Source: Octopus sinensis
Taxonomy: Eukaryota
Assembly: GCF_006345805.1 (NCBI RefSeq)
Contig: NC_043005.1
Location: forward strand, 91,698,001 to 91,762,000
Length of the DNA stretch: 64,000 nt
Direction: 5' to 3'
In this document: piece after piece, positions 17,704-46,500 of the stretch
Layout of the letters: each line of letters starts with the position of its first letter
How positions within the stretch are numbered: position 1 is the first letter of the stretch
Notes under the pieces: generated by a model
Database searches by the model: none
Told to the model about the DNA's origin: nothing
Seen by the model: only the letters and a program-made list of their open reading frames with translations
Made by a program: the position numbers and the translations under genes

Positions 17704-18289
17704 CTCAATATATATATATAATTTAATGTAAATAGTATTGAAATAACAGCTACCAATAGTTTCATGCCATAGAAGCACTGTAATTCAACCCATTTATAAC
17801 ACACCTTGTATCTCCAAGCAATCTTTTAGGCTTCGTGCACCTGGTTAGGTGTCCTATTTGAAAATCTACTTTCTGTGTTGATCTTATAACAGAACAGAAA
17901 GCTATAAACAGCCATGTGAACTAAGGCAACGCATGTAGAATTAAGTACACTAAACATATACACAGCAAAGTACCTGATATTAATATTTTGCATATACATC
18001 TATGATGTGGTATTATGTTCACTCAGATATTTCACTTCTGCACACAGTTATAGATTCATTGTTACTCAAATAATTTCAAAATGTTACAGTGTTTCTTCAC
18101 TGATACTATATTGTTTCTTTCCTTCTTTTTTTTTGTTAAAAAAAAAGAAAACAAACAAAACCTTCAACAACTGCACTGTAGTGGTAAAACTTAGTATTTA
18201 CATTTCAAATAATTTTCTGGCTCAGTCCTCTCCATTTCTCCTATTATTTCAATCTTTTCCTCTTTGCATATTTCTACAGAACTCTATTT

Positions 18290-18720
18290 CTGTCATTTTC
18301 TCTTCTTCCTTAGATATTCTCTTTCTTTACCTTTCTCCTCCCCTTCTCTCTCTCTCTCTCTCACTGTAAATGTTCTCTTTTACTCTTTCTTTTTGATACT
18401 TATACCCTTTCTTACCCATTCTCCTATTGCTCTCTACCGCTCTGAGTTTTTTGTCATTTTTCTTCTTCACCTGCCTAATTTACCTCACTGCTCTCTTCTT
18501 TCTCTTTTTACTTTTTCCTTTCTCTCTCTCTCTCCTTTTTTCTTTCTCTTCTCTCTGTCTCCTTTCTTTCCCTAACTCCTTTCCTTCTCTCTCCTCTCTC
18601 TCTCTTTCTGTCTCCTTACTCTCTTACACTCTGCACTCTCCACACTGTCTCCATTTTCTGATCTCTCTCTCTCTACTCTCCCCATCTCCTTGCTCTTTAT
18701 ATCTACCTTTTTACCTTCTT
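18290..18720 (+). repeat. Polypyrimidine (CT-rich) low-complexity tract
   Basis: About 430 bp almost entirely C/T, with (CT)n runs. Confidence 0.85.
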
Positions 18721-19075
18721 ATTTAATTTTGTTACTGTTATCTTGGATTACAGTAATCTCAGACTGCTCTGTCTACATTATAGTTTTATCTGTGAAGTTT
18801 TATTTTATTTCTTTTAATTCAGTTGCTCATCTATAAAAATGTTATATTTCTACTTCATTGCAAGATGGGGGCCATGGGTTTCTTTTATTTTACTTTTTTT
18901 AAAAACATCTTTCTTTATATTTGATAAACAACTTTGCAGTCTTCACTACATGTTGGAAATGCTACTTATTAAAACATTTGATATTTAAAAAAAAATAACT
19001 AGCTGATATTATTGCATGTAACTCTGCACAGAATGTAAACTTTATAGAAATTAGTATTGTAGTCCCAATACTAAC

Positions 19076-24639: not shown

Positions 24640-24830
24640 AATCCCTTCTATATTTAAGAGATGAGGAATTATGTACATTGTTTACATTCGACAGATATTT
24701 TTCCTCATCTTGTTTGTTGCTAACACAACATTTCGGCTGATATACCCTCCAGCCTTCATCAGGTGTCTTGGGGAAATTTCGAACACGGGTTCTCATTCCT
24801 AAGGTATTTTTCGATGTTATTATTTATTAT
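24640..24830 (-). mobile_element. Solo Penelope-like pLTR fragment containing a minimal hammerhead motif
   Basis: Minus strand gacac-CTGATGA-a-ggctg(gagggtatat)cagcc-GAAA-t-gtt-gtgtt at 24722-24767. Confidence 0.65.
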
Positions 24831-27879: not shown

Positions 27880-29580
27880 ATCCTTATTCTAGCAGCTATG
27901 CTCTCAGAGCATCCACTCCCACTACTGACTTGGTCACCTTGGTAATGGAAGCTATAAAACTACATCTAGTTTTCCCCCCTGGCATGTGATGGAATCTGTT
28001 TTCTGAAGATCTTCAGTGTTTATTGCCCCTGTGTATCTACCGCATACAAAAACTATCATCCCAGTTAATCTTCCTTTGATATTGCTGCACCTCTTATGTG
28101 TCCATTGCTTACACTGGGTACATCCTATGGAGTTTCTACCTATGCCTTTTCTATAGATCAAGCAGGGCTTGAAGGGATTTGTGATTTGTCTGCCTTTCTC
28201 CTTATTAAGACTTTGGTTTTTACTAGATTGACTCTAAGGCCCTTTGATTCTAGACCTTGCTTCTACATCTGAAACTTCTCTAGTTCTGGTAGTGACTCAG
28301 CTATTAGAGCAAGGTCATCAGCATAAAGGAGCTCCCAGGGGGCAGCCTGTCTTGAATTCCTCAGTTATTGCCTGAAGGACTATGATGAATAAGAGGGGGC
28401 TGAGGACTGATCCTTGGTGGAGCCCTACTTCTACCTGGAATTCTTCACTATACTCATTGCCAACCCTCACCTTACTGACAGCATCCCTGTACATAGCTTG
28501 TACAGTTCTCACCAACCACTCATCTATCCTTAGTTCCACATTGACTGCCAAATAAAAGATCGGGGGTCTCTGTCAAAGGCTTTCTCCATGTCAGTGAAAG
28601 CCAAGTACAGAGGTTTATCTTTGGCTTGGAATTTCTCCAGCAGCTGTCTTACCGGAAATATAGCATCAGTGGTGCTTCTCCCTGGCACAAACCCAAACTG
28701 CATCATGTCTAAATTAACTCTCTCCCTAATTAGTTGGGCTGTGACCATTTCTGTGATTTTCATCACCTGATCCAACAACTTGATACCTCTGTAATTATTT
28801 CTGTGTAATGTGTCATCTTTACTTTTGTAGTAGTTGACTATGGTGCTGCTACACCAGTCATTGGGTACGACTTCTTCATGTATCACCTGGTTGACTCTTT
28901 GGGTGACTAGACTATAGCCTACACTCCCAGATAGTTTAAGCATCTCAGCAGTGATTCCTGATGGGCTGTGGGCTTTCCCTCTCTTCATACCCTTAATTGC
29001 TTTATCTGCCAAGGTACTGTCAATTTGAATAGCTGGTCCCTATGCTGGGTCAACATTTGGCAGACTCTCTTTCTCCCATTCATTCTCTTCATTTAGTAAC
29101 CTTTCATAGTGGCATCTCCAAGTCTCTCTTTGCAGCATCATTAAATGCAAGTGAGCCATCATCCATGCAGATACATTTCTCTCTGATGACATCATAATTT
29201 TCTCTCATACACTGTCTGGCAATATGGAACACTTCAAGTTTCTGGTCCTCATGATGCAGAACATTGGCAAATGTTTTCTAACCTGCTTCCCCTCTTACTA
29301 TGTAAACCTGTCTCCTAGCTTCCCTTCTGGCAATCTGATACAATTCCTTACTACCACCACACTTCCAGTCTTTCCATGCCTGTTTCTCTACTCTAATGGC
29401 TCTGTCAACTACATTGTTCCACCACCATGTTACCTTAGGTCGAAAGGGGACTTTGCACCAGACACAGATCTGGTCAGTACCTCTTAACAGCTTGTCCCAT
29501 ATGAACCTACAGTTGTCCTCCACATTATGTATGCTATTTCCTCCTCTTTTTTTGTGAAAAGCTCCAAGTAACATGTCTCT
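27880..29580 (-). mobile_element. RTE LINE ORF2 fragment (endonuclease-RT linker through RT)
   Basis: VTWWWNNVVDRAIR; KAHSPSGITAEMLK; NNYRGIKLLDQVMK; QFGFVPGRSTTDAIF; AFTDMEKAFDR; GLHQGSVLSPLLF; LLYADDL. Frameshifted. Confidence 0.95.
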
Positions 29581-30865: not shown

Positions 30866-30995
30866 TGGAGTTTAAAGCAGGTATAATTCAAATACTTTTA
30901 CTTCCGACATGCTTCGAAGATTTCCTTAATATTATCCCAAAGGAATAAAATGGTGTAAAACAATGTAATCTTCTCTTCAGAGAAGTGAAGAAATG
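30866..30995 (-). mobile_element. Solo Penelope-like pLTR next to (TA)n
   Basis: Homologous to the 3' end of the PLE at 37681-37810 (both end ...aactccat). Contains the hammerhead at 30900-30986. Confidence 0.75.
30900..30986 (-). ncRNA. Type I minimal hammerhead ribozyme (A15.1->G variant)
   Basis: acttct-CTGAAGA-gaagatt[44 nt]aatcttc-GAAG-c-at-GTC-ggaagt: 6-bp stem I (one G.U), 7-bp stem II, short self-complementary stem III, GUC cleavage triplet. Confidence 0.7.
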
Positions 30996-31950
30996 TTAAC
31001 AGCATTAAACTGCATATTATTATCCTCAGCCCATCTGTAAATTGAGTCCAACTCCTGCTGCAGGTGTGCAACATCGCTGGGGTTTTGTATTTTCTGCAGG
31101 ACTTTCGTATCATCTGCATAGCTTGTGAGGGTGGCTATCCTGGCATTTGAGGGCATATCTGCGAGAGCCACTATAAAAAGCAGTGGTCCCAAGACAGTGC
31201 CCTGTGGAACACCGCTCACTATTTGTGTGTTCATAGAGGTGGCTCCATTAGCCACTACTGCCTGACTCCTATCTTTCAGAAAGTCATGTAACCACTCTCC
31301 AAGTTTTCCAACTATGCCAAAGTTATACAGTTTGTGGCTTATCATACCATGATCCACTTTGTTAAAAGCTTTTGCAAAATCAAGGTATATTAAGTCCACT
31401 TTTGATTTGTTGAGTAACTGCCTCAACACGCAGTTATAATGTTGTAAGAGCTTGGTCAGGCAGCTCCTACCTGGTCGAAAACCATGTCGGGTATCACAAT
31501 ATAGTTATTTTTTTTCAAGGAATGCAATTAGTTTCCCTCTGACTATCCGTTCCATGACTTTGCTGATGCGTGAAGTCAGAGAGATAGGCCTATAGTTTTT
31601 GGCATCTGCTCTACTTCCCCCTTTATGTATTGGGCATATTATTCCCTCCTTCACCTTGCTTGGCAGTTTGCCATTTGTAAGAAAGCTCTGGAAGAGAATC
31701 TGGAGGGGTTTTGCCAGGGCATGCTTACACGATTTGAGGAGGATTGCTGGGAAACCATCAGGACCAGCAATTGAGTTTGTGTCCACTTCATCTATGGCTA
31801 GTAGTATATCTTTTTCACTAATGTCAATGTATTCCATTGTAACTGCCTCACTGGTTATAGGTGAGGCGGCAAAGAAGTCCACTGGTTTGTTCACTTGTCT
31901 GTCTTCCAATGGGGTGGTAAAGACACTTTTGAACTGGTCATTCAGTATCT
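30996..31950 (-). mobile_element. CR1-clade LINE RT fragment
   Basis: AGPDGFPAILLK; PIHKGGSRADAKNYRPISLTS; IYLDFAKAFNKVDHG; SGVPQGTVLGPLLF; SYADDTKV. Confidence 0.95.
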
Positions 31951-33894: not shown

Positions 33895-33949
<55 letters not shown>

Positions 33950-34316
33950 GTATCATCATCCTCTTCATTGTTTAATGTCCTCCTTCCTTGCTGGCATGGG
34001 TTGGGCAGTTTGACTGGAGCTGGCCAGGCAGGAGTCTATGCCATGCTTCTGTGTTTGTTTTGATATGGCTTTATAGCTGGATGCTCTTCCACTCTGCAAA
34101 GTGGTTGGTGTTAAATGTATGTATGCATGCATGCATGAGTTTTGTTGCTCTAGTAACTGCATCTTTCCAGATGGCGAGTTTTAACCTAGTCAACACTCTG
34201 CCTCATCACGCCTTCTATGCCTGTGTCAATTTTCAGCTTGATCCGAACACTGGTCTGGCCGCCAACCTCTGACGTAGCAAAATGTGCACGCAATTTTGAC
34301 CCAAAGCCTCTTATAT

Positions 34317-34364
34317 GATTGATTGATTGATTGATTCTAGTTTCAGCTCATGAGCTGTGGCCAT
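34317..34364 (-). mobile_element. Short CR1-type 3' terminus with (AATC)n tail
   Basis: Minus strand atggccacagctcatgagctgaaactag-aatcaatcaatcaatcaatc, homologous to the LINE tail at 30750-30772. Confidence 0.6.
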
Positions 34365-35114
34365 AATGACAATACTTTTGCGAAATGATCATATATTATT
34401 CTTATTTTTTTTGTAATATTAAATTTATTATCATCAATAATTGATTTAAATTTTACCTTATTTTTATTTTTTATTCCATTATTAAATGTATGATTCATAT
34501 TATCATAATACATATTATTATTAAGACCATAGTTACCTAAATAAAACTCATCATAATTCAGAAAATTAGGTTTATTATTATAAAAATCATTTATGTTATA
34601 ATCCTTTAAATTATAATTATATTTACAAATATTAAAGAAGTTAATATTATTATTATATCCTGCCTCATGCAGAGCTTTATTATTATAAATAAATAAAATC
34701 AAAAAAATTTAAATTGATATCTTTCAGTTATACAAATAAAAATATACTAGCAATACTTTGACCACCAAAATCAATATCTAATATTTATAATTATACTTTC
34801 TACATCTCACATATTGAATGCAGGATAAGGTACGGGTTACACAAAATTATCATGGATTACTGCGGTGAACTTACCAATCTGAAAACTTAAAAATATTCAT
34901 ACCAATGTCTATGTACCTAAATCAAAGGCAGTAACTTTTAATTTATTTTTCAAAGACACCCTTTCATATATTTTTTCAGATTTTTAAAATAACATTCAAT
35001 CTATTATACAAACTTCTACTTTTCCATCTCTGATGAGCAGAAGTATTGCCTATCAATGTGTATCAATTATGGATTCCCTTATAATGACAATACTTTTGCG
35101 AAATGATCATATAT
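34363..35114. other. 718-bp AT-rich unit with 34-bp terminal direct repeat (candidate retro-captured circular/tandem RNA)
   Basis: ataatgacaatacttttgcgaaatgatcatatat occurs exactly at 34363-34396 and 35081-35114. About 16% GC over 34381-34680 (hand count 49/300). Contains a hammerhead-like core and an antisense ORF. Confidence 0.7.
35030..35111 (+). ncRNA. Hammerhead-like core, stem I not found
   Basis: CTGATGA (35030-35036), 12-bp stem II gcagaagtattg/caatacttttgc (one G.U; canonical G10.1-C11.1), GAAA (35100-35103), palindromic ATGATCAT, then AUA. Confidence 0.45.
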
Positions 35115-35225
35115 ATACATTTATATTTATATTAATACATACAGATATATATATGTAAATACATTTATATATATATATATTAATATATACAGATGTATAT
35201 ATATATATATATATATATATAGTAG

Positions 35226-35450
35226 TGTGAATTCGATACGTCCTGTCGCTTCCTCGTCTATGCTCGAACTATCCCTTCGTCGATGACCACACGTGCGTCC
35301 TGCTTGACCTCTTCCGCTTCCTGCGACGCATGCACCCTGCAGTCTTACGCCAGCCCCTGCAAGCCCTACTTCCGCCCGCCTCATCTGTCATCCTCTCCAC
35401 CAACACCACATAGCTCATCACATCCCACAACACTGACTGCCAACACCACA
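35226..35450 (-). mobile_element. 3' LTR (225 bp) of an LTR retrotransposon
   Basis: TGTG...CACA termini. Polypurine tract ggggggggggcg (reverse complement of 35451-35462) immediately upstream on the minus strand. Confidence 0.85.
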
Positions 35451-35462
35451 CGCCCCCCCCCC

Positions 35463-37676
35463 GATCTACAGATCACTAAACCGGCTTTCCCACTCACTTC
35501 CCGCTCCCGAACTCATGCTTTAACTGGTTTCCTAATCAGCCAACCAGGGAGGAGGGTGCCATTCCCTCTGTGGTCACAGTGCAACCCTAGGACTGGTTCC
35601 TGGCATGTTGCTGCTGGCTTCATCATCTTGTCTACTGATGTTGTCTTCATCTTCTTGCCTACTGTTGTTTTTATGTTCTTGCCTACTGTTGTCTTCATCT
35701 TCTTGCCCACTGCTGGTGGTTCCATCCTCTGAGGCATGGACAATCTTCCATATATCCAAACGTGGCATGGCATACCATCGACAGAGATGTTGTTCTTCGA
35801 ATTTATAGAGGTTATTGTTCCCTTTCCCCATTGTGATGTACACCGTGTGTTTGGGGGTTTTACCCAAACTTCTTCCCCGACCTGCACGAAGGCATGCTCT
35901 TCCTCTGCCCTGGGTCGCATTGATGCAGTACACGGATGCCTCCACTCGTACCTAAATATTGCCCTGTGTGGCACCGACTCCTCAGCCTGTCCTGATCTGG
36001 GCGACATATTATACCAAAATACAGCCTCGATTGGTGAAATGTGACCCCTCTCTGCCATGGTCTTGATGGTACGATGATGCCTTTCCACCACCCCATTTCC
36101 ACTTGGCCAGTATGCCGCCCTGAAGAAGCGGTTGACCTTCCACCCAGCAAGCATTTCTTTCAGCACCTCCGAGCGAAATGCAGTGCCATTATCCAGAAGC
36201 AGTTCATCCACGGGGCTTCGTTCCAGGAATATCTCATTGAATACTTTCACAATTTCCTCTGCGGTCCCCGTCTTCATCTCCCTCCATATGGCCAACCGCC
36301 CCGGTCCGCAGTCAACCATTGAGAGGTATGTCCCCTGCCAGCAGTGTGTTATGTCCACCACCAGTTGTGGTCCACTGGAATACTTCCTGCCTCATGTATG
36401 CCCAGAGCAGGGTTGATGGACTGGCACCTGTCACAGCTGCTAACCACTCTCTGCACATTCCGTCTTGTTACATTGGAGTCAACTTTTCTGGCTAGGAACA
36501 ATATCCTTTCCATCCCCATGTGATGCATGGTATGCAATCTCTGCAACTCCGAGTCACTCAGACGGCATACTGCAGCTACAGCCTGCTTCGCATCCTCTGG
36601 CACCTGCAACCAGGCTCGCTTTACCCTGGTCAGGACATCTGCCCTGTTCTTCTCGGAAGGCACAAAGATCACACTCAGCTTCAGATTGAACTCAGTGGTT
36701 ATTTCACGCAGTATCCCCAAACGACGCTTTACCAGCATCTCTGCAGCCCCTTTGGTCCGCACCCTCCACACATTGGTGATGACTGCTGTCACCCAACCAA
36801 GTACAGTGGCTGGCTGAATCAGTCCTGATTTCTATGGTGTGCAACCCCCACTTCAAGGCTAGGTTCACCCCCCCTTCAACACAGCATCCAACTCCGCCAT
36901 ATTGATATGATTGCAGTCATCCATCTTCCTGAGCCAGGCTGCATCTTCCACCATGACACTTCCCACTTCTAAGATAATCCCTGTTGCGATGCTACTGGTG
37001 TCACACCATACAATCCCGCTCTTTGATTTGGAAACATACCAACTGCCCCTCACTGGGTCCTCTGCTCTTACTCTGACCAAGACTTCCTGTATCATGTCAG
37101 TCATCTTCTCCCCCACTCTATCGTTCCACTTCACTCCTTCGGCTTGTCTCTTGATGAAGCTACATGCTGTCCAGAGCCATCCTGCAATCGGGTAGTGTCC
37201 CACCAGCTTCCCACACACAAAGAACAGTTCCCGTCTACTCATGCTGGCACCCAGTTCGGGGATCTCATTCCCTCGCCGGAACACCAACGTGCCGGCCTTG
37301 TCTCTCTCCATAGCTTGAGGCCCAGTGCAGCACCTCCCTCCATTGCCTCTGGTGGCTTGGCGATCAGTCCAAAACTCTTCAGGTGGCCTATGACCTCCGT
37401 TGCTGGCATTACGGTTTCATCCATCAGAATATCATCAGTGTATGAATTGGTGGCCTTTTTTACTCTGTCCACCTTTCCCAGGATGGCCTTGAGAATTGTT
37501 GCCATAATCTTTGGTGCTGAATTCAGCCCGAACCCCAACCTGGTCAGACAGTACGTCTGGCCCTTATACCTGACAAGCTGGTACTTCTACAGTTTCTCAG
37601 CCACATGCACCTGTAGGTATGCCGACTTCAAATCAATGATCGTGGAGGCCCCTGTCATCTGCCTCCACTCCAGTAA
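35463..37676 (-). mobile_element. LTR retrotransposon internal region (RT-RNase H-integrase, Ty3/Gypsy-type order), 5'-truncated and frameshifted
   Basis: RT: IDLKSAYLQV, GFGLNSAP, SYTDDIL. RNase H: WCDTSS, HINMAELDAV, VPSEKNRADVLTR. Integrase: HHCC finger (HTMHHMG...CDRC), LLDNGTAF, PSGNGVVERHHRTIK. No gag or 5' LTR seen. Confidence 0.93.
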
Positions 37677-38980: not shown

Positions 38981-39044
<64 letters not shown>

Positions 39045-39046
<2 letters not shown>

Positions 39047-39705
39047 TCATCGTTTAGCGTCTGCTTTCCATGCTAGCATGGGTTGGACGGTTCAATTGGG
39101 ATCTGGGAAGCCAGAAGACTGCACCAGGCCCAGTCTGATCTGGCAATGTTTCTACGGCTGGATGCCCTTCCTAACGCCAACCACTCCATGAGTGTAGTGG
39201 GTGCTTTTATGTGCCAGACGAGGCTGGCAAATGGCCATGATTGGATGGTGCTTTTTACGTTCCACTGGCACGAGCCCAGTTGGGGTGGCGCTGGCAACGG
39301 CCACGTTCAGATGGTTATCTTACATACCACCAGCATTGGTATCACAGCTGCAATTTCCATTGATGTTGATCGATTTTGATTTTGATTTTGATTTTCATTT
39401 GCCTCAACAGGTCTTCACAAGTAGAGTTTTATGTCCCAAGAAGGAAAGGTATGCATAAGTGGACTGGCTACATCCCAGGTAGAGGCCACAGGTTATAGTC
39501 TCACTTGTCCTGCCGGGTCTTCTCACGCACAGCATACTTCCAAAGGTCTCGGTCTCTAGTCATTTCCTCGGTGAGACCTACAGTAAGAAGGTCGTGCTTC
39601 ACCACCTCGTCCCAGGTTTTCCTGGGCCTGCCTCTTCCACAGGTTCCCTCAACCGCTAGGGTGTGGCACTTTTTCACACAATTATCTTCATCCATTCTTG
39701 CCATC
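39045..39705 (-). mobile_element. RTE LINE 3' end: ORF2 terminus, 3' UTR and (GAT)n tail
   Basis: ...GRGRPRKTWDEVVKHDL...REKTRQDK* runs straight into the UTR with the 60-bp units and the tail, which ties that repeat to the RTE. Confidence 0.9.
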
Positions 39706-39744
39706 CATATATATATATGTTAACGTATATTAAAATACATTTGG

Positions 39745-39904
39745 GTGCGGGAGTGGCTGCGTGGTAAGCAACTTGCTTACCAACCACATGGTCCGGGTTC
39801 ATTACCACTGCGTGACACCTTGGGAAGTGTCTAACCAAGACCTTGTGAGTGGATTTGGTAGATGGAAACTGAAAGGTATATATATATATATATACCTTTC
39901 ACAT

Positions 39905-40959: not shown

Positions 40960-42140
40960 GAGAGGTGGGTGGGAGTGAAGGGGGGTAATAGGTGTGAGTG
41001 GAAGAGAGGAGAGGGGGTTAGATGAAGAGGGTAGGGGAGTTGAGCCATGTAGGAGCAAAGAAAGAAGATCAATTCCTGTTCATGGCGAAGCCGGGAATCC
41101 AGATGGCCCTGTGCAAGGACAGTCCAAACACAGACAGGTGTTGTAAAGAGTGACTGGTAGAGCAGAAATGGTGTGAGACCGGGGTATTGTTGCCATGTCT
41201 GATGTCTCGAAGGTGTTCCACGGACCAATCAGCCAAGCGGTGTCCCGTTTGACCAATGTACAGAGAAGGACAGAGAGACTAGGAGATGCAGTTGTTGACG
41301 TTGCTAGAAGTGCAGGTTAAGGAGTCAGTGATATGATAGATTCGATGATGGGTGCCAGTGAGGATGGTGTTGTTGGAGAGGTAAGGGCAAGTGCAGCAGC
41401 ATGAGCGGGAGCAGGGGAATGAGCCGGGTTGGGAGGTTGGGTTAGGGAAGAAACTGTGGACCAGGAGGTTGCATAGATTGTGGGCTAGTTTGAAGGAGAG
41501 AAGGGGTCAGTTAGGGAAGATGTGTCAAGTGGAGGGGTTGGACTGTAGTCGCCGGAAGGCTCGGAGAATGTTGCGTTGGGGAGATAGGGTGGAGGGGTGG
41601 TATGTGAGGGGAAACGAGTGATGGTGGGGCGGGTGCAGGGGAGAGAGCATGGTCCACAGAATGTGCTCTGCCAAGGACAGTGTAGATAGTGGTGAGGGGA
41701 TATCCATGTAGGATGAAGTGGTGAGCCATGAGTTGAGACAGTCTCAAAGTCGTGGTTGTCACTGCAGAGCCTGTACAGACATAGGAATTGGGAATAGGAG
41801 ATGGAGAGCTTGGTGTGTTTAGGGTGGAAGGAGTAGAAGTTGAGGTATGAGTGTGAGTCTTTGTGAGAGTGGAGTGATGAATGCAGACCGAAATGTCGAG
41901 AAAGGTGATGGAAGTGTTGGAAATAGTGCAGGAGAAGTGGAGGGCAGGATGGAAAGATTGGACAAAAGAGAGGAAAGAGTCTATTTGTTTGCGGGAGAGT
42001 GAGGTTGCACCGATACAGTCATCAATATAACGACCATATAGTTCGGGAGTGGGACCAGTGAAACTTGAGAATATTTGGGCCTCAATGTAGTCAACGAGCA
42101 GGTTCGCATAGTTGGGGCCCATTCTCGTTCCCATGGCCAA
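40960..42140 (-). mobile_element. Penelope-like element (RT + GIY-YIG), degraded
   Basis: MGTRMGPNYANL...YGRYIDDCIG...ITFLDISV; endonuclease CPSLYIGQTGHRLAD..EHLRDI at ~41180-41270. Confidence 0.9.
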
Positions 42141-42610: not shown

Positions 42611-42795
42611 GGCACGTAAAAAGCACCCACTACACTCACGGAGTGGTTGGCGTTAGGAAGGGCATCCAGCTGTAGAAACATTGCCAGATTAGACTGGAGC
42701 CTGGTGCAGCTTTCTGGCTTACCAGAACCCCGGTTGAACCGTCCAACCCATGCTAGCATGGAGAACGGACGTTAAACGATGATGATGATGATGCT
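42611..42795 (+). mobile_element. RTE 3' UTR fragment
   Basis: ggcacgtaaaaagcacccactacactcacggagtgg...ggacgttaaacgatgatgatg. Confidence 0.85.
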
Positions 42796-43118: not shown

Positions 43119-43142
43119 TTATATATATATATATATATATAT

Positions 43143-43527
43143 ATGCACAGGAGTAGCTGTGTGGTAATTAGTTTGCTTACCAACCACATGGCTCTGGGTT
43201 CAGTCCCACTGTGTGGCACCTTGAGCAAGTGTCTTCTACAACCTTGGGTTGATCAAAACCTTGTGAGTGGATTTGGTAGACAGAAACTGAAGAAGCCCAT
43301 CGTGTATATATATATATATATGTGTGTATGTTTGTTTGTGTTTGTCGCCCCACCACTGCTTGACAACCAATGTGTTTACATCCCCATAACTTTGCCTGTT
43401 TGGCAAAAGAGACTGATAGAATAAGTACTAAGCTTACAAAGAATAAATCCTGGAGTTGATTTGTTCGACTAAAGGCGGTGCTCCAGCATGGTCACAGTCA
43501 AATGACTGAAACAAATAAAAGAATATA
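43143..43527 (+). mobile_element. Full-length family-B SINE
   Basis: Head tagctgtgtggtaattag...gggttcagtcccac, core ccttgagcaagtgtcttcta, internal microsatellite, tail ggcggtgctccagcatggtcacagtcaaatgactgaaac. Confidence 0.85.
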
Positions 43528-43539
43528 TATAGGTGTATA

Positions 43540-43980
43540 TGACCTGTTGAGGCAAGTGAAATCAAAATCAAATTTGATGACTGGCATCTGTGCTAGTGGA
43601 GCACTAAGAGCACCATCCGAGCATGATTGTTGCAAGAGCAGCTAACTGGCGTCCATACCGCTGGCATGTAAAAAGCACCATTCAAGTGTGATCGTTACTA
43701 GTGTTGCCTTACTGGCACTTGTGCCGGTGTGCAGGTGGCACATAAAAAAAAAAACTTTTGAGCGTGGCTGTTGCCAGTACCACCTGACTGCCCATCGTAC
43801 TGGTGGCATGTAAAAGCACCCACTACACTCTCAGAGTGGTTGGCGTTAGGAAGGGCATCCAGCTGTAGAAACTCTACCAGATTAAGATTGGAGCCTGGTG
43901 CAGCCATCTGGTTCGCCAGTCCTCAGTCAAATCGTCCAACCCATGCTAGCATGGAAAGCGGACGTTAAATGATGATGATA
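43540..43980 (+). mobile_element. RTE 3' UTR fragment with diverged tandem units
   Basis: gacctgttgaggcaagtgaaatcaaaatc (matches 39385-39415 reversed), then the units and a (GAT)n tail. Confidence 0.8.
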
Positions 43981-46279: not shown

Positions 46280-46500
46280 TCATCATCATCATCATCATTT
46301 AACGTCTGCTTTCCATGCTAGCATGGGTTGGACGATTTGTCTGAGGGCTGGTGAACCAGACTCCAATCTGATCTGGCAGAGTTTCTACAGCTGGATGCCC
46401 TTCTTAATGCCAACCACTCCGAGTGTAGTGAGTGCTTTTACGTGCCACTGGCACGAGGGCCAGTCTGGTGGTACTGGCAACGGCCACGCCCAGTCTAAAT
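46280..46500 (-). mobile_element. RTE 3' UTR fragment
   Basis: (CAT)n then ttaacgtctgctttccatgctagcatgggttggacg...ggatgcccttc. Confidence 0.8.

What the first reader, a model, noticed from the sequence alone, without database searches (positions are those of the whole stretch)
34363..35114. 718-bp unit with exact 34-bp terminal redundancy: possible fossil of a circular or tandem RNA
Seen: the 34-mer at 34363-34396 recurs exactly at 35081-35114, so the insert is one 718-nt unit plus a short overrun. The repeat belongs to the insert rather than being a host TSD, because it forms half of an internal stem and lies inside the insert's ORF. The left half is about 16% GC and the unit resembles nothing else in the window. 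Known: reverse transcription around a circular RNA, or along a self-cleaving multimer (retrozymes, PLE tandem inserts, viroid-like RNAs), gives slightly-more-than-unit copies. Inference: this is an endogenised ribozyme-bearing circular RNA, either a new retrozyme/non-autonomous PLE family or a foreign viroid-like or parasite-derived minicircle.
Basis: partly seen in the sequence, partly recalled or inferred. Interest (0 to 1): 0.85.

Follow-up and report, generated by a model that had tools for sequence, protein, structure and literature searches.

The report
Hammerhead-bearing Penelope-type retroelement insertion
A 718-base mobile-element copy sits next to a TA repeat in an invertebrate (probably cephalopod) genome; it carries the core of a self-cutting "hammerhead" RNA and the 34-base end overrun typical of Penelope-like retroelements, so it is most likely a new family of a known kind, not a foreign viroid or parasite circle.

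Summary
An exact 34-mer lies at 34363-34396 and 35081-35114, 718 nt apart. The left half has 15% GC, and nothing else in the window resembles the insert.

The new finding is a hammerhead ribozyme core on the + strand:
- CUGAUGA at 35030-35036
- a perfect 12-bp helix II, 35037-35048 with 35088-35099
- GAAA at 35100-35103
- an 8-nt palindrome, 35103-35110
- a predicted cut site after 35111, 3 nt from the end of the repeat

No shuffle or decoy control reached a 12-bp helix II. Half of the motif lies inside the 34-mer, so the repeat belongs to the element and is not a target-site duplication.

A unit plus a 30-40-bp "tail", insertion at (TA)n and no visible duplication form the published signature of Penelope-like elements.

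Against a working ribozyme: helix I is absent and no Rfam hammerhead model matches. Against a viroid-like RNA: the unit folds no better than shuffled sequence. The Asn-rich minus-strand ORF has no homologue in two very large protein searches and no early ATG.

No relative was found in any reachable collection, so family membership and circular RNA remain untested. Verdict: a non-autonomous Penelope-type or retrozyme-like insertion; moderate interest.

The parts
34363..34396 (+). Left copy of the 34-mer. It is the 3' part only of the hammerhead-like motif (helix II 3' strand, GAAA, palindrome, would-be cut site after 34393). Read as the 34-nt overrun or 'tail' of a more-than-unit copy.
34397..34740 (.). 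Extremely AT-rich half of the unit (about 15% GC) with period-3 base autocorrelation. It is the lowest-GC stretch of the window.
34343..34702 (-). Open frame of 119 codons. It is Asn-rich (27 Asn), has a TTG 'start' and its first ATG at codon 64, and ends 20 nt outside the unit. No homologues; probably not a gene.
34741..35029 (+). Less AT-rich half of the unit (about 28% GC). No ORF, no RNA family, no tRNA, and no similarity to the rest of the window.
35030..35036 (+). Hammerhead 5' core box CUGAUGA (positions C3-A9).
35037..35099 (+). Helix II: 12 contiguous pairs (35037-35048 with 35088-35099, one G-U, closing G10.1-C11.1) around a 39-nt loop.
35100..35111 (+). Hammerhead 3' core box GAAA (35100-35103), then the palindrome ATGATCAT (35103-35110, a minimal helix III that can pair only between two copies), then A35111 as would-be H17. 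The predicted cut lies between 35111 and 35112.
35081..35114 (+). Right copy of the 34-mer, forming the 3' end of the full unit. Its last 3 nt (TAT) could equally come from the TA-rich target.
35109..35221 (.). Imperfect (TA)n microsatellite that directly abuts the right end: the presumed AT-rich target.

Best explanation
This is one insertion of a non-autonomous retroelement of the Penelope-like (PLE) or 'non-LTR retrozyme' kind, in + orientation.

Proposed mechanism (inferred):
1. The element RNA carries a hammerhead-derived motif at its unit boundary.
2. A PLE-type reverse transcriptase/endonuclease, supplied in trans, nicked an AT-rich (TA)n target.
3. It began copying at or next to the hammerhead cut site (35111-35114).
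4. It copied one full 718-nt unit from a longer-than-unit template, either a tandem transcript or a circle.
5. It ran 34 nt into the preceding unit before ending at 34363. This produced the 'unit + 34-nt tail' with no separate target-site duplication.

The assembled copy holds only one complete hammerhead-like motif, and that motif lacks helix I. The copy is therefore most likely an inert fossil. The minus-strand Asn-rich ORF is most likely a by-product of AAT-rich, period-3 simple sequence.

Shown directly: the repeat, the motif and its statistics, the missing helix I, the flanking microsatellite, and the absence of relatives. Inferred: the RNA intermediate, the PLE enzyme, and the template form.
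For: Repeat:
- The 34-mer is exact and unique to these two sites.

Hammerhead core:
- The core with a 12-bp helix II and a G10.1-C11.1 closing pair reads directly.
- Core boxes with a stem of 12 bp or more appeared in 0 of 400 whole-window shuffles and 0 of 20000 local shuffles. A stem of 8 bp or more appeared in 1 of 20000 local shuffles.
- With 400 decoy box permutations on the real window, the largest stem was 9 bp. Decoys averaged 0.58 hits per window against 6 for the true boxes.
- Helix II is kept in the local fold and in the circular whole-unit fold.
- The 8-nt palindrome forms an intermolecular helix in a dimer cofold.
- Long helix II, a G10.1-C11.1 pair and a palindromic helix III that works between two copies are the features described for PLE minimal hammerheads (PMC4209133).

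Link between motif and repeat:
- The 3' half of the motif lies inside the 34-mer, and the predicted cut site is 3 nt from the repeat's end. By my estimate this has about a 2% chance for a random position.

PLE signature in the literature:
- An optional 30-40-bp 'tail' is a signature shared by and unique to PLEs (PMC11167929; PMC8557442; a 31-bp case in PMC3846280).
- PLEs prefer AT-rich or (TA)n targets, often without a visible duplication (PMC8557442; PMC11167929).
- Here the right end abuts a TA microsatellite, and no further duplication flanks the feature.
Against: - Helix I is absent, both in the right-flank context and in the internal-junction context. No run of 3 or more pairs was found, and duplex energies equal those of shuffles.
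- No Rfam hammerhead model matches, even on 136 nt at E<=10.
- No PLE-type RT or GIY-YIG ORF was found among the window's ORFs that were scanned. The two RT fragments look LINE-like.
- There is no second copy or relative of the unit in the window or in any reachable collection. Family, covariation and the 'tail' identity are therefore untested.
- The 718-nt unit is longer than the tandem units cited for animal retrozymes, about 330-350 bp in axolotl (PMC7229834).
- The ORF is longer than in all 2000 local shuffles. A coding origin for the AT-rich half is therefore not excluded.
Confidence: 0.55

Rival explanations
1. The locus is really a tandem array (satellite) of 718-bp hammerhead-bearing units, and the assembler collapsed it to about 1.05 units. 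The 34-nt overrun only reflects where the array starts and ends. This keeps the retrozyme/PLE nature of the unit but changes the structure of the locus.
For: Tandem arrays are the usual genomic form of animal retrozymes, and PLE partial tandems are known to upset assemblies (PMC7229834; PMC8557442). 'One unit plus a short overlap' is what a collapsed repeat looks like (my knowledge of assemblers). A minimal hammerhead with a palindromic helix III needs a second copy nearby, which an array would provide (PMC4209133).
Against: The window has no N and no visible join. A start-to-end phase difference as small as 34 of 718 nt would be a roughly 5% coincidence. Nothing here measures read depth.
Confidence: 0.15
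2. The 34-mer is a long target-site duplication. A 684-nt unrelated AT-rich sequence (34397-35080) was inserted, either as a minus-strand RNA copied by one of the host's LINEs or as DNA captured at a staggered break. The hammerhead-like core is then a chance chimera of insert and target.
For: LINE-type RT fragments lie in the window. The minus strand of the insert ends in A8 followed by 8 mixed A/T-rich bases, directly before the left 34-mer. The right 34-mer runs smoothly into the host TA repeat. No other duplication flanks the feature.
Against: It requires 12 nt of perfect complementarity plus GAAA in the 'target', placed exactly next to CUGAUGA plus the other strand in the 'insert'. This occurred in 0 of 20000 local shuffles, and no decoy exceeded 9 bp. 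The 3' end is not a poly(A) tail. The open frame runs to the very end of the insert without a stop, unlike an mRNA retrocopy. I recall 34 bp as long for LINE duplications; this was not checked here.
Confidence: 0.12
3. This is an endogenised copy of a foreign, autonomously replicating circular RNA (viroid-like, obelisk- or delta-like), or of a parasite or symbiont minicircle from a very AT-rich organism. The minus-strand ORF would be its protein.
For: The composition is far from the host's: 15% GC, the window minimum. The open frame has period 3 and is longer than in all 2000 local shuffles. In tandem or circular reading the frame would stop exactly at the unit junction. A hammerhead-type core is present.
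Against: The circular fold is no more stable than shuffles in either polarity. No Rfam ribozyme matches on either strand. The ORF has no homologue among 5.8 billion clusters or 1.84 billion representatives, and no Pfam family. It has no ATG before codon 64, and AAT makes up 24 of its 120 codons. No DNA match was found in viral, metagenome, prokaryote, plasmid or phage collections.
Confidence: 0.05
4. This is a local DNA-level rearrangement of host sequence (replication slippage or microhomology-mediated duplication) with no mobile element involved.
For: The region is full of microsatellites, with TA, TAT and TGAT runs on both sides.
Against: The 684 nt between the repeats resemble nothing nearby. 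They are a compositional outlier and carry the hammerhead core.
Confidence: 0.04

Closest known systems
Penelope-like elements (PLEs): partial-tandem insertions with pseudo-LTRs, the optional 30-40-bp 'tail', and non-autonomous derivatives
   Same: A more-than-unit copy with a 34-nt extension inside the published 30-40-bp range. Insertion beside a (TA)n microsatellite with no discernible target duplication. A hammerhead-type motif sits in the repeated end (PMC11167929, PMC8557442, PMC3846280, PMC4209133).
   Different: No RT/GIY-YIG ORF, so it is non-autonomous at best. The repeat is only the 34-nt tail, not a pLTR of the roughly 180-220 bp reported for rotifer PLEs in PMC3846280. No inverted 5' copy. 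No sequence link to any PLE could be tested. Naiads, which the paper reports in cephalopods, are said to lack canonical hammerheads.
Minimal hammerhead ribozymes of metazoan PLEs (Cervera and de la Pena 2014)
   Same: Complete core boxes, a G10.1-C11.1 pair, a longer-than-usual helix II, and a palindromic helix III able to pair only between two copies.
   Different: Helix II is 12 bp with a 39-nt loop, against 6-8 bp in the published motifs. There is no unpaired base after A9. Helix I, 2-5 bp in the published motifs, is absent.
Animal non-LTR retrozymes (small tandem repeats with type I hammerheads that give circular RNAs)
   Same: Non-coding or orphan, low GC, hammerhead at the unit boundary, more-than-unit genomic copies, and proposed dependence on PLEs (PMC7229834; bioRxiv 10.64898/2026.07.22.740005).
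   Different: The unit is 718 nt, against the roughly 330-350-bp tandem units cited for axolotl. It is assembled as 1.05 units, not an array. The hammerhead is incomplete. Circular RNA is untested. The retrozyme and PLE-hammerhead papers whose text I searched for the terms do not mention cephalopods, and a literature search found no paper on octopus hammerheads.
Plant LTR retrozymes and viroid-like circular RNAs
   Same: Unit size (600-1000 nt) and the idea of a hammerhead-processed RNA.
   Different: Those carry type III hammerheads. I recall them as compact, highly paired folds, with LTRs of a few hundred bp. Retrozymes also have a PBS, a PPT and 4-bp duplications (PMC7229834). Here the fold equals shuffles, the repeat is 34 nt, and the motif topology is type I/minimal.
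LINE-mediated retrocopies and SINEs flanked by target-site duplications
   Same: A direct repeat flanks an insert in a LINE-containing genome.
   Different: The repeat carries half of a structured motif whose other half is inside the insert. There is no poly(A) or simple-repeat tail.

Membership tests
Hammerhead ribozyme (type I / minimal PLE type) | Conserved core: CUGANGA, G10.1-C11.1, GAAA | tested here: met
   35030-35036, 35037/35099 and 35100-35103. 0 of 400 and 0 of 20000 shuffles match; decoys reach 9 bp at most.
Hammerhead ribozyme (type I / minimal PLE type) | Helix II directly between the two boxes | tested here: met
   12 contiguous pairs, kept in the local and circular MFE folds.
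Hammerhead ribozyme (type I / minimal PLE type) | Helix III with A15.1-U16.1 and a non-G at position 17 (short or palindromic in the minimal type) | tested here: met
   Palindrome 35103-35110 followed by A35111. An intermolecular 8-bp helix forms in the dimer cofold.
Hammerhead ribozyme (type I / minimal PLE type) | Helix I formed by the bases just 5' of C3 and just 3' of the cut site | tested here: not met
   No run of 3 or more pairs at any offset in either context. Duplex energies equal those of shuffles.
Hammerhead ribozyme (type I / minimal PLE type) | Match to a curated hammerhead covariance model | tested here: not met
   No Rfam hammerhead at E<=10, even on 136 nt. Whether PLE-type minimal motifs are represented in Rfam was not checked.
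Hammerhead ribozyme (type I / minimal PLE type) | Self-cleavage | not testable with these tools
   No RNA data are available.
Penelope-like element insertion (non-autonomous) | ORF with telomerase-like RT and GIY-YIG endonuclease | tested here: not met
   The only long frame in the unit is an orphan with no Pfam hit. The element could only be non-autonomous.
Penelope-like element insertion (non-autonomous) | More-than-unit (partial tandem) copy giving direct terminal repeats | tested here: met
   718-nt unit plus 34 nt.
Penelope-like element insertion (non-autonomous) | Optional 30-40-bp 'tail' extension | tested here: inconclusive
   The length of 34 nt fits (PMC11167929, PMC8557442). Showing that it is a family-wide optional extension needs other copies.
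Penelope-like element insertion (non-autonomous) | AT-rich or microsatellite target, with a short or indiscernible target duplication | tested here: met
   The right end abuts the TA repeat at 35109-35221. The 40-nt flanks share no 4-mer or longer.
Penelope-like element insertion (non-autonomous) | Sequence shared with an autonomous PLE of the same genome | not testable with these tools
Nothing similar lies in the window, and the window's RT fragments look LINE-like.
Animal non-LTR retrozyme | Tandem array of small units, each with a complete type I hammerhead | tested here: not met
   1.05 units of 718 nt as assembled, with one complete core that lacks helix I.
Animal non-LTR retrozyme | Expressed as circular RNA | not testable with these tools
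   No transcriptome is available.
Viroid-like / autonomous circular RNA | Unusually stable, highly paired circular fold, and ribozymes recognisable in one or both polarities | tested here: not met
   z = -0.1 (+) and +0.3 (-) against 40 shuffles. No Rfam ribozyme matches.
LINE-mediated retrocopy | Target-site duplication plus a 3' poly(A) or simple-repeat tail | tested here: inconclusive
   The 34-mer could formally be a duplication. The minus-strand end is A8 plus 8 mixed bases, which is not a tail. The motif statistics argue against this reading.

The most novel reading that the evidence does not exclude
The insert is a DNA fossil of a roughly 718-nt circular, hammerhead-processed RNA replicon from outside the host genome. 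It would have come from a very AT-rich symbiont or parasite, or be a free viroid/obelisk-like agent of an invertebrate. Its antisense Asn-rich frame would be a real protein that ends exactly at the circle junction.
Probability: 0.05. Interest if true: 0.8.

Novelty: new member of a known kind. Interest (0 to 1): 0.38.

Why it matters
If the reading is right, this genome, probably a cephalopod's, holds a hammerhead-associated, Penelope-mobilised non-autonomous family. The papers I searched describe no such family for this group.

The family would have unusual traits: a 718-nt unit, a 15%-GC half, and a very long helix II with no helix I. The copy also shows the PLE 'tail' overlapping the predicted ribozyme cut site, with the tail's end 3 nt past the cut. 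That bears on the open question of how hammerhead position, internal initiation of reverse transcription and more-than-unit copying are linked in PLEs.

On its own, as a single inert copy, it is an annotation-level result.

Tried and rejected
- Homology of the 119-aa ORF: none in 5.8 billion clusters, 1.84 billion representatives or Pfam. The exact sequence is not on record.
- DNA and ORF relatives: none in metagenome contigs, viral contigs, prokaryote genomes, plasmids or phages.
- Empty-site or other-assembly look-up through flank ORFs: not on record.
- Rfam at four scales: no ribozyme.
- tRNA/SINE head: none.
- Second internal copy of the 34-mer region (the 82% 17-mer at 34743): alignment score is below the shuffle mean, so it is chance.
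- Terminal inverted repeats (a MITE): none beyond helix II.
- Type III hammerhead topology: by eye, only 4 pairs for helix I and a poor helix III. Rejected.
- PLE partner in the window: the RT fragments are nearest to L1 and R2 structures, and no GIY-YIG domain was found.
- Mitochondrial or parasite-minicircle origin: no support. The only long open frame in the unit has no Pfam family.
- Bacterial promoter and terminator scan: at background level and not relevant to a eukaryote.

Full report
**Observation.** The exact 34-mer is present at 34363-34396 and 35081-35114 and nowhere else in the window, even at 3 mismatches. None of 100 shuffles gave a match. The spacing is 718 nt, and the 6 nt outside each copy differ, so the edges are sharp. 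GC is 15% in 34397-34700, 27% in 34701-35080 and 23.5% in the 34-mer. The left flank has 46% and the sequence beyond the right-hand TA repeat has 57%. The left half is the lowest-GC 300-nt stretch in the 64 kb. Apart from TA-microsatellite matches, the feature resembles nothing else in the window on either strand. The window has no N.

**The key feature.** Reading the + strand shows a hammerhead ribozyme core.
- CUGAUGA lies at 35030-35036.
- It is followed at once by a 12-pair helix (35037-35048 with 35088-35099, one G-U, closed by G-C at the core) around a 39-nt loop.
- GAAA follows at once at 35100-35103.
- Next comes the 8-nt palindrome ATGATCAT (35103-35110), then A35111.
- In hammerhead numbering this gives C3-A9, G10.1-C11.1, G12-A15.1, a self-complementary 15.x/16.x segment ending in U16.1, and H17 = A. 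The predicted cut lies between 35111 and 35112.

**Statistics for the core.** A descriptor (box, 0-1 nt, stem, box) finds this motif with a 12-bp stem.
- In 400 dinucleotide-preserving shuffles of the whole window, no motif had a stem of 10 bp or more.
- In 20000 shuffles of the 752-nt feature, none reached 12 bp and one reached 8 bp.
- Real sequence has more hairpins than shuffles, so I also ran 400 decoy permutations of the two boxes on the real window. The largest stem was 9 bp.
- Decoys averaged 0.58 hits per window, against 6 (five loci) for the true boxes. No decoy reached 6.
- Hammerhead-type cores are therefore about ten-fold enriched in this window, and the one at 35030 lies far outside the null.
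- Helix II is retained in the local MFE fold and in the circular fold of the whole unit, 12 of 12 pairs.
- Two copies of 35020-35114 cofold with the palindrome as an intermolecular 8-bp helix.

**What this means for the repeat.** The 3' strand of helix II, the GAAA box, the palindrome and the predicted cut site all lie inside the 34-mer. The CUGAUGA box and the 5' strand lie 33-51 nt upstream, in unique insert sequence. If the 34-mer were duplicated host target, the motif would be a chance chimera, and the controls make that very unlikely. The left copy is a 5'-truncated motif. The predicted cut site is 3 nt from the right edge of the repeat, and those 3 nt (TAT) could equally come from the TA-rich target. 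By my estimate, a random position would fall that close to a repeat edge about 2% of the time.

**What is missing.**
- Helix I is absent. The 20 nt before CUGAUGA do not pair with the bases after the cut site, either in the right-flank context or in the internal-junction context after the left copy. No run of 3 or more pairs appears at offsets 0-3 or with up to 40 nt between A15.1 and U16.1. Duplex energies equal those of shuffles.
- No Rfam hammerhead model, and no other ribozyme, matches at E<=1 on 3.5 kb, at E<=10 on 951 nt, at E<=10 on 136 nt, or at gathering score on the whole window.
- The 718-nt unit (34394-35111, a contiguous stretch folded as a circle) is no more stable than 40 dinucleotide shuffles: z = -0.1 for the + strand and +0.3 for the - strand. 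It does not look like a viroid-like RNA.

I therefore call the motif a hammerhead-like core and do not file it as a working ribozyme.

**The ORF.** The minus-strand frame 34343-34702 has 119 codons.
- It is longer than in all 2000 local shuffles, though shuffles already average 46 open codons in this composition.
- The AT-rich half shows period-3 autocorrelation, and AAT makes up 24 of 120 codons.
- It has a TTG 'start' and its first ATG is at codon 64.
- It reads through the left 34-mer and 20 nt into the flank. In the right-copy context the same reading stops immediately after the 34-mer.
- It has no homologue in the 5.8-billion-cluster search or the exhaustive search of 1.84 billion representatives. 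It has no Pfam family, and the exact sequence is not on record.

I read it as a by-product of AAT-rich simple sequence. A captured or real coding fragment is not excluded.

**Relatives.** None was found in metagenome contigs, viral contigs, prokaryote genomes, plasmids or phages. Flank ORFs are not on record either. The host assembly is evidently not in the reachable collections, so no empty-site or copy-number test was possible.

**Context.**
- The left flank holds a copy of a SINE-like interspersed repeat that also occurs at about 39040 and 46285. A short (TGAT)5 run follows at 34316-34335.
- The right end abuts an imperfect (TA)n microsatellite, 35109-35221.
- Beyond that lie minus-strand fragments of an LTR-retrotransposon integrase (rve, Integrase_H2C2, DUF7047). 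Its named relatives, at 55-68% identity, include Octopus sinensis, a cuttlefish, sea slugs and crustaceans. This is consistent with a cephalopod host but does not prove it.
- Two RT fragments at 28318-29012 and 30977-31429 (minus strand) are nearest to L1 and R2 structures and look LINE-type.
- No GIY-YIG domain was found among the ORFs scanned.

**Comparison with what is known.**
- PLE insertions are typically 5'-truncated partial tandems. An optional 30-40-bp extension, the 'tail', is described as shared by and unique to PLEs. It has been traced to two internal start sites of reverse transcription (PMC11167929; PMC8557442; a 31-bp example in PMC3846280).
- PLE endonucleases prefer AT-rich DNA. 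Naiad PLEs, which the paper reports in Octopus and other cephalopods, target (TA)n, so that duplications are often indiscernible (PMC8557442).
- Rotifer PLE duplications, where reported, are 8-10 bp or absent.
- PLE pseudo-LTRs carry minimal hammerheads with a long helix II, a conserved G10.1-C11.1 pair, a short helix I and a palindromic helix III that works between two copies (PMC4209133).
- Animal retrozymes are small low-GC tandem units with type I hammerheads (axolotl units are about 330-350 bp), and a 2026 preprint argues they are non-autonomous PLE derivatives (PMC7229834; bioRxiv 10.64898/2026.07.22.740005).

The feature matches the unit-plus-tail architecture, the target type, the lack of a separate duplication, and most of the minimal-hammerhead description. 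It differs in unit length, in the very long helix II and its loop, in lacking helix I, and in having no demonstrable PLE partner.

**Mechanism proposed, mostly inferred.**
1. A + strand element RNA of more than unit length, either a tandem transcript or a circle, was the template.
2. A PLE-type enzyme acting in trans copied it at a nick in the TA repeat.
3. Copying started at or beside the cut-site position (35111-35114).
4. It ran through one unit and a further 34 nt.

The data cannot tell a tandem template from a circular one. The assembled copy has one complete core and no helix I, so it is most likely inert.

**Rivals.**
- A collapsed tandem array: same kind of element, different locus structure.
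- A 34-bp target duplication around an unrelated insert, which the motif statistics contradict.
- A foreign circular RNA or parasite minicircle: the composition and open frame fit, but the fold, the ribozyme searches and all homology searches are negative.
- A local rearrangement.

**Novelty and interest.** This is most likely a new family of a known kind. The papers I searched for the terms, and the literature search, yielded no report of hammerhead or retrozyme elements in cephalopods. A single inert copy with no family data is of moderate interest. The overlap of the tail with the predicted cut site is the point worth following up.

Noticed in passing
window 24720-24770, minus strand: A compact minimal-hammerhead-like motif. 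It has CUGAUGA at 24762, one unpaired base, a 6-bp helix II with an 8-nt loop, GAAA at 24734, two bases, then U and U as position 17, and a 5-bp helix I. It fits the published PLE minimal type better than the motif under study. Rfam does not report it.
   Followed up: partly
whole window, both strands: Hammerhead core boxes flanking a stem of 4 bp or more occur 6 times at five loci (22518+, 24762-, 28016-, 35030+, 37438-). Decoy boxes give 0.58 and shuffles 0.64. This genome seems rich in hammerhead-type relics.
   Followed up: partly
window 35283-37311, minus strand: Fragments of an LTR-retrotransposon pol gene in separate ORFs: an integrase core, an H2C2 zinc-binding domain and DUF7047. Relatives at 55-68% identity occur in Octopus sinensis, a cuttlefish, sea slugs and crustaceans. 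A 24-nt tandem repeat (35611-35712) lies inside the integrase ORF.
   Followed up: partly
window 28318-29012 and 30977-31429, minus strand: Two reverse-transcriptase fragments nearest to L1 ORF2p and R2 structures, that is, degenerate LINE copies. A PHD-like zinc-finger ORF lies at 27952-28161.
   Followed up: partly
window 33945-34060, 39040-39150, 46285-46395: Three copies of a SINE-like interspersed repeat, each preceded by a microsatellite (TA or ATC runs). Other repeat families pair 39726-39791 with 43126-43191 and 42619-42691 with 43812-43884.
   Followed up: partly
window 18001-19000 and 41001-42000: Strong strand-composition anomalies: GC skew -0.51 with AT skew -0.38 in the first, and GC skew +0.55 in the second. 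Not examined.
   Followed up: no
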